Notes: generated by a model from the sequence alone, not told the origin. 63,677 nucleotides of DNA, filler included, from Octopus bimaculoides (GCF_001194135.2; 5 parts of 5 records of this genome joined end to end with filler, not necessarily neighbours in it); one strand, 5' to 3'; counted from the whole stretch's first letter, positions 29,293-43,969 are shown. Numbers and translations are program-made.

Positions 29293-29379
29293 CGGCAAAG
29301 AGGCGAATAACTGGTAAATGGATACTGACAGGCTGGCTAGCAACATCATATTTTATACACTGAGCTACAATTCCTGCAA
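29293..29379 (-). CDS. UBR1/UBR2: UBR1/UBR2 exon (87 nt, phase 1/1): (F)AGIVAQCIKYDVASQPVSIHLPVIRLFA(G)
   Basis: atctatttcag|TT GCA ... GCC G|gtattt. Carries the conserved VSIHLPLSRxxAG motif. Confidence 0.94.
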
Positions 29380-29486
29380 CTGAAATAGATAAAAATATAT
29401 TACCTTAAAGGGAAATGTTACAAAGAATTTTACACAAATCAGGTACTGACTTTACGTAGAACAAAATTTTCACATAAGTTTCATGT

Positions 29487-29720
29487 ATATGTAGGACATG
29501 GTTTTAATTTATATGTAGGACAAGGTTTTAATTTATATGTAGGACAAGGTTTTAATTTATATGTAGGACATGGTTTTAATTTATATGTAGGACATGGTTT
29601 TAATTTATATGTAGGACAAGGTTTTAATTTATATGTAGGACAAGGTTTTAATTTATATGTAGGACAAGGTTTTAATTTATATGTAGGACAAGGTTTTAAT
29701 TTATATGTAGGACAAGGTTT
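29487..29720. repeat. 24-bp minisatellite, ~10 near-perfect units (GGTTTTAATTTATATGTAGGACAA)
   Basis: Direct reading. It generates the spurious KLKPCPTY ORF. Confidence 0.97.
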
Positions 29721-29780
29721 TGATTTACACATAAGACAAGGCTCAAATCTAGAAAGAACAATGGTTGAATTTACCCTCAC

Positions 29781-30262: not shown

Positions 30263-30505
30263 CTGTATGATCCATTTTACATGACATGACAGCTATACAC
30301 CCGTATGATCCAGTTACAACAATAGCTGTTCACCTGTATAATTCATGTTATAATACATGACAAGAATATATCTATATGAGCCATATTGCAACACATGACA
30401 ATTATACACCTGAGTGTATCCATGTTACAATTCATGACAAAAATACATTTGTATGATCCATGTTACACAACATGACAACTTGATGTCTGTGAGCCAATGT
30501 TACTA
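30263..30505. repeat. Decayed ~38-bp minisatellite, ~6-7 units (TGTATGATCCATGTTACAACACATGACAACTATACACC-like)
   Basis: Recurring tgtatgatcc and catgaca motifs at ~35-39 bp spacing. Confidence 0.75.
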
Positions 30506-30998: not shown

Positions 30999-31127
30999 AT
31001 TACTGCCACACCAGTCCAAAAACAAAGCAATGTTATCTTGTAAACGAAGTTGAAGATTAAATGCACTTTCCCATTCTGGTTCTATTTCTAAATGTTGACC
31101 AGTTTTACGGGTGACAGAATCCATTCC
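30999..31127 (-). CDS. UBR1/UBR2: UBR1/UBR2 exon (129 nt, phase 0/0): GMDSVTRKTGQHLEIEPEWESAFNLQLRLQDNIALFLDWCGSN
   Basis: gttttacag|GGA ... AAT|gtaaga. Hallmark MQGM...GQHIEVDPDWE-type motif of UBR1/2. Lies within ORF 30981..31163. Confidence 0.96.
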
Positions 31128-31397: not shown

Positions 31398-31503
31398 TTG
31401 TATGCTTATCAAAAGATCAAGCAATGCATTAAAGCCATTGCAGAAGCTTTTCTTCAATTGGTCTGTCCACTCTTCAGCACTTGGTTTACACAGCAATGCA
31501 TAT
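31398..31503 (-). CDS. UBR1/UBR2: UBR1/UBR2 exon (106 nt, phase 2/0): YALLCKPSAEEWTDQLKKSFCNGFNALLDLLISIQ
   Basis: catttcag|A TAT ... CAA|gtaagt. Similar to UBR1 [33 protein letters not shown]. Lies within ORF 31389..31622. Confidence 0.95.
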
Positions 31504-32041: not shown

Positions 32042-32083
<42 letters not shown>

Positions 32084-32852
32084 TCCCACCCACATATGAT
32101 ATTAAATAAGTTCACAAGTCATATATCATAATATCAAATACAACTTATGAAATGTAAAATGACAAACTGCAAATTAGAAGTAAATAATGAAAAGAATTGA
32201 GTTTTGTCAGATTTGTGATTTAAATATAAAATAACTCAAACAAGGCCCCACTCTAGTGATTCAAGCACTCAAAATCCTCGTCATTATCCGCTATGTAAAG
32301 TAATTTAGGTGATGAGGCTACTGTGAACTTACTGATTATTTAAATAAGATCCACCCCATGCATATTTCACATATATTTAAGAATACTTGGATCCTTCTCC
32401 ACAAAAATAATAGGAGCAAACTGGCATTGGAGAGAGTGTCTTGCAGTTTTTGATTTAGCTCCCTGCACCAGTTCAAACCCCACTGAGGTCAACTGTGTCT
32501 CTGACCCTTTTGGGGATCTATAAAGTACCCCTTCTTGACTGGGATTGACTCTTCTCTCTCCCACAGGAAGAAAATGGACTGAACAGACCTGGAGAGGGAT
32601 GGGTTCTGCTAAGCCCAGAAATGTCCAAGACACATCATGTCATGACAGTGCCCTTATAGCTCTATCAAGAGTTGAGGATCCAATATGATATGGTTTCATT
32701 TATTGTCAAACCCCACAACAACTTTTATAAAATTAAGTAATCCACAAAAACTTCTGTTTTTTTTCCCTTTAATATTTTACAAACTTCTAATTTCCATATT
32801 CTGGAAGTTATCAAATCAAGTTAGCTTTACTCTATACACAAGAGCTACTTAC

Positions 32853-32931
32853 TTTAGATCATATAGTATAAACCAAGCTCTCTTAAATGAGTTGCCATTT
32901 TCACTTCTTCCAAATGATAATTTTCCTCTCT
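32853..32931 (-). CDS. UBR1/UBR2: UBR1/UBR2 exon (79 nt, phase 1/2): (K)RGKLSFGRSENGNSFKRAWFILYDL(K)
   Basis: tttgcgttgcag|AG ... CTA AA|gtaagt. Ends in the conserved xDLKY motif, which the next exon completes. Confidence 0.92.
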
Positions 32932-33199: not shown

Positions 33200-33410
33200 A
33201 TAATCCTATGGATTTGGATTTAAACTGAATAATCCATTGGATTTAAACTGAATAATCCATTGGATTTAAATTGAATAATCCCATGGGTTTAAATTGAATA
33301 ATCCATTNNNNNNNNNNCTGAATAATCCATTGGATTTAAACTGAATAATCCATTGGATTTAAATTGAATAATCTTATGGATTTAAATTGAATAATCCTAT
33401 GGATTTAAAG
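33200..33410. repeat. 23-bp minisatellite, at least 8 units (GGATTTAAACTGAATAATCCATT)
   Basis: Unit starts at 33216, 33239, 33262, 33285 and so on, with a 10-N gap inside. Confidence 0.95.
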
Positions 33411-33458: not shown

Positions 33459-33540
33459 TATTCTTTTTACTTTCACATTGTTTTAAGAAGGTCTGCAATA
33501 TCACTCCCAACAGGTTGTGTTCTGTGATTAGGAAACGAGC
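33459..33540 (-). CDS. UBR1/UBR2: UBR1/UBR2 exon (82 nt, phase 0/1): ARFLITEHNLLGVILQTFLKQCESKKN
   Basis: ctttatcatag|GCT ... AAT A|gtaagt. Similar to UBR1 ARHLIEEQNVISVITETLL. Joins exon A or exon B in frame. Confidence 0.93.
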
Positions 33541-35519: not shown

Positions 35520-35748
35520 GTTTCTTTATTGCCCACAAGGGGCTAAACATAGAGGGGATAAACAAGGATAGACAAAGGGATTAAGTCGATTACATCGACT
35601 CCAGTGCACAACTGGTACTTAATTTATCGACCCTGAAAGGATGAAAGGCAAAGTTGACCTCGGCGGAATTTGAACTCAGAACAAAACGGCAGACGTAATA
35701 ACGCTAAGCATTTAGTTCGTGCTAACGTTTCCGCCAGCTCGCCGCCTT
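35520..35748 (-). mobile_element. Family B SINE, young-looking, alternative tail
   Basis: Reverse head ccagctcgccgcct. Core intact and CpGs retained. Confidence 0.88.
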
Positions 35749-36580: not shown

Positions 36581-36685
<105 letters not shown>

Positions 36686-36709: not shown

Positions 36710-37579
36710 CAGGGTGCTATGGGTAAATTGTCGCATTTTATATTCTTAATTTTGCATATGCACATTGTTTGTTTTTGATTTTTTTTAACTACAAAGTATA
36801 GTAGGGTCAGTTGGGCACCATCTGCGACAAAAAAAAAAAAAAAAGCACCATGACGCAATTCACTTTGCTATGTTGTACTGCTTGGCATTCATGCCGGAAG
36901 CTCCAACACGGACATTTCAGAGTGTTTGTGTTTCAATCTGAGGACATGTATTGAGAGTGATAAAAAGATCAAACCTCCCATCAACATTATGGTGTCTGGA
37001 GTGATCACTAGTGATGGCAACATTATGCCTCCATTCATCTTCGCACACAGCCTCACACTCAACACGGAAGCCTACGTCAAGTGGCTGGAGGAGGTAGTAT
37101 TGCCCTAGGCCATACTACCTCCTCATACTGCTGGAAGACCTTATGTCTGGCAACAGGACTCTGCACCATGCCACGCAAGCAGGAGAACCCAGTCATGGCT
37201 GTCAGACAATTTCTGCGACCACATCACCCCTAACATCTGGCTATCTAACTCGCTAGACTGCATCCCCTTGATTATTATATGTAGAGTGCAGTTGAGCGAG
37301 AGACCAACAAAACTCTTTGTAACACCAAAGATGAACTGAAGGCAAGGATTATGGAAGCATTCACCAACTTAAATAAGGAGACCATCCAGAAGAGTTGCAG
37401 GAGATTCTGAAGTCATCTGGAGGCTGTGGTTGAAGCCAATGACAATTTTATAGAATAAATTTACTCTTTAGTATTTCAAGATATTTTTATGTAATTTTGG
37501 TAAATATATCTTAAAATGAGATGTCAGTGTTATTTTTATTTTTGCGTAAATTAGACAACAATTTATTCACCGCACCCTG
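36710..37579 (+). mobile_element. Tc1/mariner DD37D (maT-type) transposon, internally deleted and frameshifted
   Basis: Imperfect TIRs CAGGGTGC...AAATTG at both ends with TA on the right. YVWQQDSAPCH...WLSNSLDCIP(L)DYY, with 37 residues between the last two Asp once a 1-nt deletion is corrected. Confidence 0.88.
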
Positions 37580-37810
37580 TATGTGTGTATATATATATAT
37601 ATCTATATATATATATATATATATATATAGTAATATATTGCAAAATGTCTCAAATTATACAGCTACAAGAAACATTTCTTAGATCTTTTAATGATAACAT
37701 CTGGCAGCATATATTTCTGTGATGGAAATTAGTCTAAAAACATAGGTTTAGGTAATTTCTTTAGATATGGAACACTGCTTAAGAATGAGACAGCAGTAGA
37801 AACAACCTAC

Positions 37811-37909
37811 CACCTTAGGAGCTGTGAAAATCTGAAGGGAATCAGAGATAATGGAAACCGATCGTAAATGATCATCCTTGATAAAGTTCTGCATAAGTTC
37901 AGCATAGTG
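37811..37909 (-). CDS. UBR1/UBR2: UBR1/UBR2 internal exon, duplicated-exon variant B (99 nt, phase 0/0): HYAELMQNFIKDDHLRSVSIISDSLQIFTAPKV
   Basis: Long pyrimidine tract cttttgattttcttgtttcttattttag|CAC, donor GTG|gtaggt. Same length and phase as exon A, 15/33 aa identical including DDH and QIFT, no stops. Confidence 0.85.
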
Positions 37910-39559
37910 CTAAAATAAGAAACAAGAAAATCAAAAGAAACAGTAATAAAAATGTTATTACATGGCAGTCTTTGGCACTTACATAATCAATTACATCATT
38001 TTACATAAATAACAGCCATAAATATCAACTTTACTTTGTCATCCTTACAATACATAAACAGTTCTATCAAAGAAGTTTAAATTTTAAAATAGGTGAAAAT
38101 AGTATGTTATTAGTGATATCTTTTTTATAGTTGAACACAATTAGATATAAACATGTTTAGCTAATTCAGTTTTTAACAATCTAAATTTCTTTTTATGGAC
38201 AAATGCTTCAGTAGGTTGTACTTTCAATGAAAAAGAATTTAATTGTAAAGCAATACAACTATTAAAAACTATTGCAGAGGAGTAAATCAAATTTGATAAA
38301 TTTCTGTTTCATGGTTATCAATTGTATTCACAATTACAACAATTGATATTAAATTAGCAAATATTTGCTTTAAAAATGATAAAACAAATAGTTATGCTTT
38401 TATTATAAAGCAATTATTCATGCAACAATAGCATTTGGTGGTGCTGCCAAAGACAAACAATTTCTTTAAAAGAATTTCAAATTGTTTCAGTTGCTTTATA
38501 ACTTATTTGGTTCAGAAAATTAGTATATTTTTTAAAATAAATTTTAAGAAGTTTAACAAAAGCAAAAATGAAAATAAAAAAATTTCTATATATGGAATAT
38601 TCTCAGAGAAGCTTTGCAATATTGCACTTTAATTTTGATTTCATTTCTTTTTTTTCCAGCATGTATTTAAGCAAGCGCTAAAGATTGTTTAAAACAAGTA
38701 ATAATTCAACCATTGAAACTTCCAGAAAACAATGAAATCTTCATTAAAATATTACTGTAAATCAATGTCACATGTTAATTAATTTAGATAAAGAAAAGGC
38801 TAATTAATGATATACCTTTTTTCCATCATTTTAAAAAATGAAATGAAAAAGAAAGGGGAGAAATGTTTGTAATAAGCAGAACACACTTCAGCTCTATGTA
38901 CACTTTCATTCAACTAAAAGATTTATGAAAACTGACTGTCTTGTAATGTTTGTTTAACCTGGTGTAATTTTTTTTTTTAATGTTAGCTAGCCATGTAGAC
39001 CAATCAGCAAACAAGTATTGCAACCATTGCAATAGTGTGCAAACTATAAACAATAGGCACCAGGATTAAAACCAAGACACCTGCAATTCCCAGACAATTG
39101 CTTTCTCCACTTAAAAGTCAGCTGCAGCACCGATTTAAAGTTAGTTTTTAAGAAATGCCACAAAATACTCAAAAGAAAATAAACTATATTGCATTACATA
39201 ATTTGTTGCATTCAGCTACAAATGAAACCTGTCTGAACATCAAGTTTGTTTGAAAATTAAATATCTATCCTAGAATAACAATCTTATTCTATTTGTCAAT
39301 ATTGCTGAATCCTCCAAGAATTTAAAAGATACGAAAAAGTAACATGTCATTTAAGTTCCTTGATAGAATCAACACAATCACTAGACAGACCTAATTATAC
39401 CTACTTCTATACTAGTGTGCAGGTTAATAATTTCATGTAACATCAAGTCTAACTGAAGTACAATAAAGTTGATGCTTGGCTGTGATTTATGTTCAGGTGT
39501 TAGAAATTGTTTATGCAATTGCACAGTGAAACTGCCATGTGCTTTCCTGATTAACATAC

Positions 39560-39658
39560 CAGACTGGTCAGAGTAAAGATTTGGACAGAAAGGGACACGA
39601 CGGACACTTCATGGTCGTGGTCATCTTGTAAAAAGTCTTCCATCAGTTGAGAATATTT
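39560..39658 (-). CDS. UBR1/UBR2: UBR1/UBR2 internal exon, duplicated-exon variant A (99 nt, phase 0/0): KYSQLMEDFLQDDHDHEVSVVSLSVQIFTLTSL
   Basis: Acceptor atttccacag|AAA, donor CTG|gtatgt. Translation matches my recollection of the conserved UBR1 segment [33 protein letters not shown]. Confidence 0.93.
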
Positions 39659-40937: not shown

Positions 40938-41320
40938 ATCTTTTACTTGTTTCAGTCATTAGACTGTGGCCATGCTGGGGCACCACCTTGAAGAACTTTT
41001 AGTTAAATGAATCAACCCCAGGACTTATTTTTTTTTCTCTTTTAAGCCTGGTACTTGTTCTTTCAATCTCTTTTGCTGAACTGCTAAGTTACAGGAACAT
41101 AACCACACCGAAACTGGTTGTCAAGCAGTGGTGGGGGTGGTGACATCACACACACACACACACACAATGGGCTTCTTTCTTTTTCCATCTACAAAAGCCA
41201 TTCATAAGGTTTTGATCGGCCCAAGATTATAGTAAAAGACACTTACCCAAGGTACCACACAGTGAGACTGAACCGAGAACCATGTGGTTGGGTAACAAGC
41301 TTCTTACCACAAAGACACAC
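40938..41320 (-). mobile_element. SINE family A, full-length, intronic in UBR
   Basis: Matches the 54302 copy in reverse, with a central (CA)n. Confidence 0.85.
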
Positions 41321-42574: not shown

Positions 42575-42900
42575 CTTTCACTACAACCACACCCGTCATT
42601 AACTAAGCTGCCTTAGGTAATAGAAACTGCCTAGTATTATCATGCAGTTTCAANNNNNNNNNNNNNNNNNNNNNNNNNNNNNNNNNNNNNNNNNNNNNNN
42701 NNNNNNNNNNNNNNNNNNNNNNNNNNNNNNNNNNNNNNNNNNNNNNNNNNCTTTCACTACAACCACACCCGTCATTAACTAAGCTGCCTTAGGTAATAGA
42801 AACTGCCTAGTATTATCATGCAGTTTCACTACAACCACACCCGTCATTAACTAAGCTGCCTTAGGTAATAGAAACTGCCTAGTATTATCATGCAGTTTCA
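42575..42900. repeat. 72-bp tandem repeat across a gap
   Basis: Unit tttcactacaaccacacccgtcattaactaagctgccttaggtaatagaaactgcctagtattatcatgcag: one copy before the gap and two after. Confidence 0.9.
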
Positions 42901-43530: not shown

Positions 43531-43969
43531 CTAAGATGGTTTTAAACTTCTCTAGCATCATGATGAAGAAAGAAGAATTATATGAATGTAAACTATATTG
43601 TCTTCAGATTAATAAAGTGGAACAGGAGGCCAAAAAACCTGTTTGTACTAATACAAGCACACAAGTGTGGCTGTATGCTATGAAGCTTGCTTCCCAACCA
43701 ATGGTTTCTGGTTCAGTCTCAATGTGTATGAAACAAGTAAAAACGATTATCTGGAGGAAGTGGAGATATTTGTTAGTTTGGTAGGCACTGATTAAAATAA
43801 AGATGATGATGATGCACAGCAAGTTCAACTGCAGCCTACAGAAGCATCTCCTCTTTGCTCCTCTTAATGNNNNNNNNNNNNNNNNNNNNNNNNNNNNNNN
43901 NNNNNNNNNNNNNTTAATTAATTAANNNNNNNNNNNNNNNNNNNNNNNNNNNNNNNNNNNNNNNNNNNN

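What the first reader, a model, noticed from the sequence alone, without database searches (positions are those of the whole stretch)
37960..39540. Long-range inverted repeat positioned to block A-to-B splicing
Seen: plus-strand 37960-37969 (acatggcagt) is the exact reverse complement of 39531-39540 (actgccatgt). In the pre-mRNA, one arm lies 20-29 nt after the exon A donor and the other 51-60 nt before exon B. The helix extends by a G-U and an A-U pair, a 4-nt bulge, and 4 more pairs (37976-79 with 39525-28), 16 bp in total. Rough estimate: a 10-mer with 5 GC pairs within ~60-nt windows at both sites has a chance near 0.002. Inference: pairing collapses the 1650-nt intron so that donor A sits about 25 nt from a likely branch point (taataac, just 3' of the stem). 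That is too close for spliceosome assembly, or the stem masks the branch region. Known: intronic RNA pairings control mutually exclusive exons in insects.
Basis: partly seen in the sequence, partly recalled or inferred. Interest (0 to 1): 0.78.

Follow-up and report, generated by a model that had tools for sequence, protein, structure and literature searches.

The report
Intron hairpin between two alternative exons
The 10-base match is real, but it is only the tip of a roughly 100-base-pair hairpin, probably left by an old DNA insertion, lying between two alternative exons of a UBR1/UBR2 ubiquitin-ligase gene; that it stops the two exons being spliced together is plausible but unproven.

Summary
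The 10-mers 37960-37969 and 39531-39540 are exact reverse complements. They are the outer ends of an imperfect inverted repeat. Its core is 37960-38039 with 39460-39540, and it extends to 37960-38082 with 39349-39540.

The 10-mer alone is weak (P about 0.013). The extended repeat is far beyond chance: 0 of 2000 shuffles reach its score, and duplex z is -7.3.

The gene is on the minus strand and is a UBR1/UBR2-type N-recognin. Exons A (39560-39658) and B (37811-37909) are homologous 99-nt, phase-0 exons. The same pair occurs in other animals and is documented as mutually exclusive in mammalian Ubr2.

In two other species the A-B intron is only 63-65 nt. Here the intron outside the repeat is 19 + 50 = 69 nt. 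So the repeat most likely marks the ends of a 1581-bp insertion into a once tiny intron, which explains why it sits close to both splice sites.

Folding predicts the stem at pair probabilities mostly above 0.9, which restores a 69-nt effective intron. I found no sign of selection on the RNA: no wobble bias, no competing partner, and no such repeat in two distant relatives with long A-B introns. The blocking role stays an attractive, untested hypothesis.

The parts
39560..39658 (-). Exon A. It is 99 nt, phase 0-0, and encodes KYSQLMEDFLQDDHDHEVSVVSLSVQIFTLTSL. This is the canonical A type with His at position 16. Acceptor is cag, donor is GTATGT.
   Evidence: 76% identical to P0003. Aligns to human UBR2 residues 396-428.
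37811..37909 (-). Exon B. It is 99 nt, phase 0-0, and encodes HYAELMQNFIKDDHLRSVSIISDSLQIFTAPKV. This is the diverged B type with Arg at position 16. Acceptor is tag, donor is GTAGGT.
   Evidence: 45% identical to exon A over all 33 residues, 54% over the 28 that tblastn aligns. Closest to the B-type exon of L010.
37910..39559 (-). The A-B intron, 1650 nt, 27% G+C.
39531..39540 (-). It is the outermost part of the 5' arm.
37960..37969 (-).
39349..39540 (-). The 5' arm of the extended inverted repeat. The core is 39460-39540. It carries extra unpaired sequence of about 64 nt, roughly 39368-39431, relative to the other arm.
37960..38082 (-). The 3' arm of the extended inverted repeat. The core is 37960-38039.
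39541..39559 (-). The 19-nt spacer between the exon A donor and the stem (GUAUGUUAAUCAGGAAAGC).
37910..37959 (-). The 50-nt segment between the stem and exon B. It holds the branch-point candidates (UAAUAAC with A at 37955, -46; UUUAU with A at 37947, -38; UUGAD-type UUGAU with A at 37931, -22) and the polypyrimidine tract.
38083..39348 (.). Interior of the repeat-bounded segment. It is AT-rich (26% G+C). It has no Pfam hit at curated cutoffs among the intron ORFs tested (only two sub-threshold matches, 13.5 and 13.9 bits), no Rfam match and no other copy in the piece.
33459..33540 (-). Exon C of the same UBR gene (ARFLITEHNLLGVILQTFLKQCESKKN...). Either A or B joined to C-F gives an open frame.
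30999..31127 (-). Exon F (GMDSVTRKTGQHLEIEPEWESAFNLQLRLQDNIALFLDWCGSN), the most conserved UBR exon in the piece. Exons D (32853-32931), E (31398-31503) and G (29293-29379) lie around it.

Best explanation
The two 10-mers are the best-preserved outer ends of a long, decayed inverted repeat that bounds 1581 of the 1650 nt of the intron between two tandem alternative exons of a UBR1/UBR2-type N-recognin gene.

Origin (inferred). The repeat-bounded block is an old insertion into an intron that was once only about 65-70 nt long, as it still is in other animals. The most likely source is a non-autonomous DNA transposon or foldback element with terminal inverted repeats of about 120 nt; an inverted duplication is the alternative. 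This history alone explains why the arms lie 19 nt from the A donor and 50 nt from exon B.

Consequence (predicted by thermodynamics, not shown in vivo). In the pre-mRNA the arms pair into an imperfect hairpin of about 100 bp that loops out the insert. The folded A-B intron then has the geometry of the ancestral short one, 19 + 50 = 69 nt of unpaired sequence. The base of the stem abuts the branch region of exon B.

Effect on splicing (inferred). The stem most likely makes A-to-B joining inefficient and dampens use of the B acceptor. If so, the insertion did not destroy whatever exclusivity the short intron gave. Whether the pairing is maintained by selection is not shown.
For: - Gene and exons. 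A profile of the two exons hits 1700-2300-aa proteins carrying zf-UBR, ClpS, UBR1 winged-helix and PRT6_C domains. Exons A/B plus C-F align to human UBR2 residues 396-557 at E 2.8e-45. All exons have AG/GT borders, and either A or B keeps the frame open.
- The repeat is real and long.
- The stem is in the minimum-energy structure of the 1848-nt exon A to exon B RNA, with pair probabilities mostly 0.9-1.0.
- The same exon pair sits 63 nt apart in L008 and 65 nt apart in L010. Read-through ORFs P0005, P0100 and P0113 imply about 60-66 nt in further species. Here 69 nt lie outside the repeat.
- The mismatch spectrum fits neutral decay of a DNA repeat: 5 versus 3 strand-specific wobbles, 7 transversions, 81 gap columns.
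- Inverted repeats derived from mobile elements are common in this piece and inside the A-B intron of L007.
- The mammalian Ubr2 pair of 33-aa exons is reported as mutually exclusive (bioRxiv 10.1101/863175).
- Steric interference is scored at a donor-to-branch distance below 50 nt (PMC5740500). The effective distance here is 24-47 nt, depending on which branch candidate is used.
Against: - There is no target-site duplication at the repeat ends. At best there is CA versus TA if the ends are shifted by one base (read directly).
- No second copy of the arms exists in the 15.6-kb piece.
- There is no transposase remnant.
- The element's copy number in the genome could not be checked.
- L002 and L007 have long A-B introns, so a short ancestral intron in this lineage is an inference from L008 and L010 only. 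Introns of 65 nt splice well in many invertebrates, so short length need not mean exclusion in L010.
- The minus-strand duplex is somewhat more stable than the plus-strand one (-79.1 versus -65.5 kcal/mol). This could hint at RNA-level selection.
- Thermodynamic folding ignores co-transcriptional folding, proteins and helicases.
Confidence: 0.55

Rival explanations
1. The stem is a selected regulatory RNA structure whose purpose is to prevent exon A from being spliced to exon B. It would do this by bringing the A donor within about 25 nt of the B branch point, or by masking the branch region. It would thereby enforce mutual exclusion of two in-frame exons that nonsense-mediated decay cannot police.
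For: - Both exons are 99 nt and phase 0, so double inclusion stays in frame and needs another safeguard.
- The stem is very stable and is predicted with high probability.
- The unpaired remainder of 69 nt matches the natural 63-65-nt A-B introns of other species.
- The sense-strand duplex is about 14 kcal/mol more stable than the antisense one.
- The region about 20 nt upstream of a branch point, needed for U2 snRNP anchoring (my knowledge), would lie inside the stem for the -46 and -38 candidates.
Against: - No evidence of selection: wobble 5 versus 3, many transversions and indels.
- No competing partner, so it cannot work as a switch.
- No equivalent repeat in L002 or L007, which keep both exons with long introns.
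- The branch candidate at -22 gives 47 nt, near the permissive limit.
- Published long-distance pairings that bring splicing signals closer together activate splicing.
- No transcript data are available for this species.
Confidence: 0.25
2. The stem helps splicing rather than blocking it. By looping out 1.58 kb, it brings the A donor next to the B acceptor. This is how known intron-internal pairings work in 14-3-3 xi, Mhc, SF1, DNM1 and ATE1, and how yeast intron zipper stems work. The stem would then promote removal of the A-B intron. Both exons would be included together, or inclusion would simply be made efficient.
For: - Review PMC11802352 lists these cases as activating by bringing splicing signals closer.
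- The donor GU and the first 19 nt, and the last 50 nt with the polypyrimidine tract and two branch candidates, remain unpaired.
- Introns of 65-69 nt are spliced normally in many invertebrates (my knowledge).
Against: - Double inclusion would insert a duplicated 33-aa segment into a conserved helical region of UBR.
- Vertebrate proteins of this family, including the solved UBR1 and UBR2 chains, carry one copy, and the mammalian pair is mutually exclusive.
- The B type is conserved as a distinct variant across lineages, which fits alternative rather than joint use.
Confidence: 0.1
3. The hairpin matters as double-stranded RNA rather than for splice-site geometry. It could be a substrate for ADAR editing, which is very active in cephalopods, or for small-RNA production. 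Its position would then be incidental.
For: An imperfect duplex of about 100 bp predicted at high probability is the kind of structure ADAR enzymes bind (my knowledge). TE-derived inverted repeats in introns are the main editing substrates in other animals (my knowledge).
Against: Both arms are intronic, so editing would not recode the protein. Nothing in the sequence tests this. There is no Rfam match.
Confidence: 0.07
4. Chance complementarity in an AT-rich intron.
For: The 10-mer alone has P about 0.013 in the chosen windows, and about 11 such pairs are expected per intron.
Against: The extended repeat scores 52 against 18.7 +/- 2.8, with 0 of 2000 shuffles reaching it. blastn E is 1.3e-5. 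Duplex z is -7.3.
Confidence: 0.01

Closest known systems
Steric-hindrance mutually exclusive exons. Examples are alpha-tropomyosin exons 2/3 (my knowledge) and the 9% of human clusters with donor-to-branch distance below 50 nt (PMC5740500).
   Same: Two adjacent alternative exons whose joining would need a donor and a branch point too close together. The homologous UBR exon pair has a 63-nt intron in L008 and a 65-nt intron in L010. The folded intron here leaves 69 nt.
   Different: Here the linear intron is 1650 nt. The short distance exists only if a long-range stem forms, so it is conditional on RNA folding.
Docking-site and selector competing RNA structures. Examples are Dscam1 exon 6, 14-3-3 xi, Mhc and srp, and ATE1 exons 7a/7b (PMC4691838, PMC7797038, PMC6071210).
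   Same: Long-range intronic base pairing inside a cluster of tandemly duplicated alternative exons.
   Different: This is a single stem with no competitor, and both arms lie inside the one intron between the two exons. In those systems pairing activates the adjacent exon. They are also supported by conservation and covariation, which could not be shown here.
Intronic inverted repeats derived from mobile elements. Examples are inverted Alu pairs and MITE-like palindromes.
   Same: Decayed arms with indels and transversions, long imperfect dsRNA, and many other such repeats in this piece and in the L007 intron.
   Different: Inverted Alus usually flank exons and cause skipping or circular RNAs. 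Here both arms are in one intron and delimit almost all of it. No target-site duplication and no family copies were shown.
The mammalian Ubr2 mutually exclusive exon pair.
   Same: Same gene family, same exon position (human UBR2 residues 396-428) and the same 33-aa length. It is reported as an MXE event with 19 conserved residues between the two exons (10.1101/863175).
   Different: It is not settled whether the invertebrate and vertebrate duplications are the same event. Both vertebrate exons carry Arg at position 16, whereas the invertebrate A type has His and the B type Arg.
Yeast intron 'zipper' stems between the 5' splice site and the branch point (my knowledge: Libri 1995; Charpentier and Rosbash 1996).
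   Same: An intron-internal stem that shortens the effective distance between donor and branch point.
   Different: Those stems leave a permissive distance and improve splicing. Here the residual distance is 24-47 nt.

Membership tests
UBR1/UBR2 N-recognin gene | Exons homologous to the helical region that follows the UBR box and ClpS-like domain | tested here: met
   Exons A/B plus C-F align to PDB UBR2 9wbv_A residues 396-557 (E 2.8e-45) and to UBR1 9wbw_A (E 8.5e-37). Full-length hits carry zf-UBR, ClpS, UBR1 wing and PRT6_C domains. The UBR box itself lies outside the piece.
Tandem-duplicated mutually exclusive exon cluster | Adjacent homologous exons of equal length, same phase and intact splice sites | tested here: met
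   Both are 99 nt, phase 0-0 and have AG/GT borders. They are 45% identical over 33 aa. A-type and B-type exons recur in L002, L007 and L010.
Tandem-duplicated mutually exclusive exon cluster | Transcripts contain one exon or the other, never both | not testable with these tools
   No transcript data are available for this organism. The only documented case is mammalian Ubr2.
Docking-site/selector competing RNA structures | One docking element complementary to two or more selector elements, so that pairings compete | tested here: not met
   Only one significant complementary pair exists. All other combinations of the 300-nt exon flanks, and both arms against the flanking introns, score within shuffle noise. 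No further blastn hits were found. The upstream intron is incomplete in the piece.
Docking-site/selector competing RNA structures | Conservation or compensatory change of the paired arms across species | tested here: inconclusive
   No close relative was reachable. Distant relatives L002 and L007 have no terminal repeat (z -0.25 and +0.74). Such structures are rarely conserved at that distance (PMC5740500).
Steric-hindrance MXE | Donor of the upstream exon less than about 50 nt from the branch point of the downstream exon | tested here: inconclusive
   The linear distance is about 1600 nt, so the feature is not met. With the stem formed, the distance is 24, 31 or 47 nt for branch candidates at -46, -38 and -22.
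DNA transposon / MITE with terminal inverted repeats | Terminal inverted repeats at both ends of a discrete segment | tested here: met
   37960-38082 with 39349-39540; core of about 80 nt at 75% identity.
DNA transposon / MITE with terminal inverted repeats | Target-site duplication flanking the repeats | tested here: not met
   The flanks ...ATGTTATT and GCTTTCCT... share no direct repeat. CA versus TA appears only if the ends are shifted by one base (read). This could be due to decay.
DNA transposon / MITE with terminal inverted repeats | Multiple copies in the genome, or an empty site in a relative | not testable with these tools
   Only 15.6 kb of this genome is available, and there is no other copy in it.

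The most novel reading that the evidence does not exclude
A mobile element landed in a sterically constrained intron of about 65 nt between two mutually exclusive UBR exons. The event was tolerated, and is now kept under selection, because the element's own terminal inverted repeats fold back in the pre-mRNA and recreate the short effective intron. Mutual exclusion in this lineage would then depend on a long-range RNA stem acting through steric hindrance, not through competing docking and selector pairings.
Probability: 0.25. Interest if true: 0.65.

Novelty: new member of a known kind. Interest (0 to 1): 0.4.

Why it matters
If the stem does keep exon A from being joined to exon B, it would link two textbook mechanisms of mutually exclusive splicing: steric hindrance and RNA secondary structure. 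It would also show how a transposon insertion into a length-critical intron can be neutralised by the transposon's own inverted ends.

The locus is a clean natural test case. There is one stem, two in-frame exons, and relatives with the 63-65-nt 'empty' arrangement.

The analysis also gives a caution for sequence scans. An inverted repeat that hugs both splice sites can be the footprint of an insertion into a tiny intron rather than a designed regulator.

Separately, the tandem A/B exon pair of UBR1/UBR2 is shared by several invertebrate lineages, and a similar pair occurs in vertebrates. This points to isoform diversity in the N-degron ligase that has received little attention.

Tried and rejected
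- The search for homologous proteins with exons A+B and with the 165-aa A+C-F peptide returned nothing usable. The word index seems to miss these eukaryotic proteins.
- Pfam on all minus-strand open segments gave no family.
- A scan of JGI metagenome contigs for relatives of the two exons gave 337 pattern matches, none confirmed.
- Exact look-ups of three window ORFs (the exon B ORF, the exon A ORF, and the intronic ORF over the 5' arm) found nothing on record.
- Rfam gave only sub-threshold microRNA-family hits on GT/TA microsatellites and nothing in the A-B intron.
- Pfam on intron ORFs and on mariner-looking ORFs gave nothing at curated cutoffs.
- I searched for a competing partner of either arm and for direct paralogy of the exon flanks left by the duplication. 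All results were within noise.
- The strand-specific wobble test was uninformative, 5 versus 3.
- Chance was rejected as an explanation.
- A snoRNA or miRNA host role for the intron was rejected.
- A possible outward extension of the stem pairs AAUCAGGAAAG after the donor with CUUUUGAUU in the polypyrimidine tract. It appears in the duplex prediction but not in the full fold, and I did not count it.

Full report
**Observation**

The plus-strand decamers at 37960-37969 (ACATGGCAGT) and 39531-39540 (ACTGCCATGT) are exact reverse complements.

The gene lies on the minus strand. Exon A is 39560-39658, with acceptor cag and donor GTATGT. Exon B is 37811-37909, with acceptor tag and donor GTAGGT. 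The intron between them is 37910-39559, 1650 nt.

**Is it more than chance?**

The decamer alone is weak evidence.
- Dinucleotide shuffles of the first and last 60 nt of the intron give an exact complement of 10 or more in 1.3% of trials.
- About 11 decamer inverted pairs are expected anywhere in this AT-rich intron, and 12 are seen.

But the decamer is only the outer end of a much longer imperfect inverted repeat.
- blastn aligns 37960-38033 with 39464-39540: 79 columns, 74.7% identity, E 1.3e-5. Local alignment carries it to 38039/39460.
- A further collinear block, 38062-38080 with 39350-39368, was found independently.
- The local alignment score of the intron ends is 52, against 18.7 +/- 2.8 and a maximum of 37 in 2000 shuffles. 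Among window pairs at the same spacing across the piece, only those overlapping this locus reach that score.
- The duplex energy of the two 150-nt intron ends is -79.1 kcal/mol, against -42.4 +/- 5.0 for shuffles (z -7.3) on the sense RNA. On the antisense strand it is -65.5 (z -5.8).
- Folding the whole 1848-nt RNA from exon A to exon B places a stem joining 39349-39538 to 37962-38082 in the minimum-energy structure. Pair probabilities are mostly 0.9-1.0.

The repeat is real.

**What the gene is**

A profile of the two exon peptides, searched against 1.84 billion representative proteins, gave 184 hits. The long hits (1700-2300 aa) carry the UBR box, a ClpS-like domain, the UBR1 winged helix and the PRT6 C-terminal domain.

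Five more exons of the same gene follow on the minus strand:
- C, 33459-33540
- D, 32853-32931
- E, 31398-31503
- F, 30999-31127
- G, 29293-29379

All have AG/GT borders. Either A or B joined to C-F gives an open frame. That 165-aa peptide aligns to solved human UBR2 residues 396-557 (E 2.8e-45) and to UBR1 (E 8.5e-37).

A and B are both 99 nt and phase 0-0. They are 45% identical over 33 residues. A is the canonical type and is 76% identical to P0003. B is diverged.

**Comparative evidence on the exon pair**

The same tandem pair exists in other animals. All loci below were fetched with the look-up of encoding contigs.

| Locus | A-B intron |
|---|---|
| L002 | 554 nt |
| L007 | 2349 nt |
| L010 | 65 nt |
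| L008/L009 (GC-rich, vertebrate UBR2-type) | 63 nt |

Read-through ORFs P0005, P0100 and P0113 imply about 60-66 nt in still other species.

In the four invertebrate lineages, position 16 of the exon is His in the first exon and Arg in the second. A types resemble each other more than they resemble their own B partners. The duplication therefore predates the split of these lineages.

A preprint on CHO cells reports the Ubr2 pair as a mutually exclusive event between two 33-aa exons with 19 shared residues (10.1101/863175).

**The key point**

In the window, the intron sequence outside the inverted repeat is 19 nt (GUAUGUUAAUCAGGAAAGC) plus 50 nt (AAUAAC...UUUUAG). That makes 69 nt in all, about the size of the whole A-B intron in L010 and L008.

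The simplest reading is that a 1581-bp block bounded by inverted repeats was inserted into a once tiny intron. The closeness of the arms to both splice sites was the feature that made the finding look designed. On this reading it follows from history and needs no selection.

Several observations are consistent with a decaying DNA repeat.
- The arms differ by 15 mismatches: 7 transversions, 5 that would be G-U on the sense RNA, and 3 that would be G-U on the antisense RNA. There are also many indels.
- Other inverted repeats of mobile-element type are frequent in the piece.
- The A-B intron of L007 is packed with palindromic elements, although none at its ends.

Several observations count against a confident transposon call.
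- There is no target-site duplication. At best there is CA versus TA after shifting the ends by one base.
- There is no second copy in the 15.6 kb.
- There is no transposase remnant.

**How it probably works**

Shown:
- the repeat itself;
- its predicted pairing;
- the geometry.

Inferred:
- The stem forms in vivo.
- The folded intron behaves like a 69-nt intron whose donor lies 24, 31 or 47 nt from the branch candidates at -46 (UAAUAAC), -38 (UUUAU) and -22 (UUGAU). All three fall under the 50-nt criterion used for steric interference in human clusters (PMC5740500).
- From my own knowledge, U2 snRNP needs about 20 nt upstream of the branch point. For the two upstream candidates that region would lie inside the helix.

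Several points argue against treating it as established.
- Neither arm has a competing partner in the 300-nt flanks of either exon, nor in the parts of the flanking introns present in the piece. The docking/selector architecture is therefore absent.
- L002 and L007 keep both exons with long introns and no terminal repeat (z -0.25 and +0.74). The pair can evidently be maintained without such a stem.
- A recent review lists long-distance intronic pairings in 14-3-3 xi, Mhc, SF1, DNM1, PLP1 and ATE1 as activating, because they bring splicing signals together (PMC11802352).
- Introns of 65 nt splice well in many invertebrates (my knowledge).
- There are no transcript data for this organism.
- I could not verify that it is a cephalopod.

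**What could not be done**

The conservation test that would decide the matter needs orthologous introns of close relatives, and none were reachable.
- Two word-index protein searches failed.
- The metagenome scan confirmed nothing.
- Three exact look-ups of window ORFs found nothing.

Rfam shows no known RNA in the intron. Its only hits are sub-threshold matches on microsatellites elsewhere in the piece.

**Verdict**

The stem and the geometry are real, and the comparison with the 63-65-nt introns of other species makes a steric effect plausible.
- However, the position is explained by an insertion into a tiny intron, and no signal of selection or function could be obtained.

My probability estimates are:

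| Reading | Probability |
|---|---|
| Insertion relic that folds, with at most an incidental dampening of A-to-B splicing | about 0.55 |
| Stem selected to block A-to-B splicing | about 0.25 |
| Stem that promotes A-B joining | about 0.10 |
| dsRNA role unrelated to splice geometry | about 0.07 |
| Chance | about 0.01 |

It is an ordinary kind of object, an intronic inverted repeat in a known alternative-exon cluster. Its one interesting and testable twist is that the folded intron has about the same length as the natural short A-B introns found in other species.

Noticed in passing
L008 1284-1346 and L010 6047-6111: In a vertebrate-type UBR2 locus and in an invertebrate locus, the two homologous 99-nt exons are separated by introns of only 63 and 65 nt. 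Read-through ORFs P0005, P0100 and P0113 suggest the same in other species. This points to a steric-hindrance arrangement for the UBR exon pair.
   Followed up: partly
window 39634-39645 and 37849-37859: The full fold pairs a stretch of exon A with a stretch of exon B (11 pairs; probabilities 0.7-0.89 for the first seven, 0.3-0.6 for the last four). This may be a by-product of the long stem bringing the exons together. If it is real, it is an exonic dsRNA of the kind ADAR could edit.
   Followed up: no
window 36854-37336 (+): Three overlapping ORFs read like the C-terminal part of a mariner/Tc1 transposase (...WQQDSAPCHASRRTQSWL...). They lie in the B-C intron. Pfam gave no hit, so the resemblance rests on my reading only.
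   Followed up: partly
window 28317-28498 and 40939-41137; 41257-41320 and 43665-43727; 32470-32527 and 35620-35676: These are other inverted copies of dispersed repeats, probably SINE-like (200 nt at 73%, 64 nt at 81%, 58 nt at 76%). The first pair brackets the whole run of exons A to G and could in principle pair across 12 kb of pre-mRNA.
   Followed up: no
window 29479-29741: A 24-nt minisatellite, 11 copies, 95% matches, in the intron upstream (in the transcript) of exon G. It reads as a long open frame on both strands (GFNLYVGQ repeats) but is not coding.
   Followed up: no
window 33214-33409 with N run 33308-33317: A 23-nt tandem repeat, 8.5 copies, starts about 50 nt after the exon C donor and is interrupted by a 10-N assembly gap.
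   Followed up: no
window 42654-42750 (N) and 42752-42900: A 97-N gap is followed directly by a 72-nt unit repeated 2.1 times at 100% identity. This looks like an assembly artefact at a gap edge.
   Followed up: no
window 36583-36672, 28270-28304, 32050-32079, 37588-37638: These are (GT)45 and several (TA)n microsatellites. All sub-threshold Rfam 'mir-297/mir-466' matches fall on them and are artefacts.
   Followed up: yes
L007 intron 7637-9985: The A-B intron of this relative contains nested palindromic elements, for example two 247-nt copies in inverted orientation at 93% identity. These are MITE-like insertions away from the intron ends.
   Followed up: partly
window 30263-30478: A degenerate 38-nt tandem repeat, 5.8 copies, 67% matches, in the F-G intron.
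   Followed up: no
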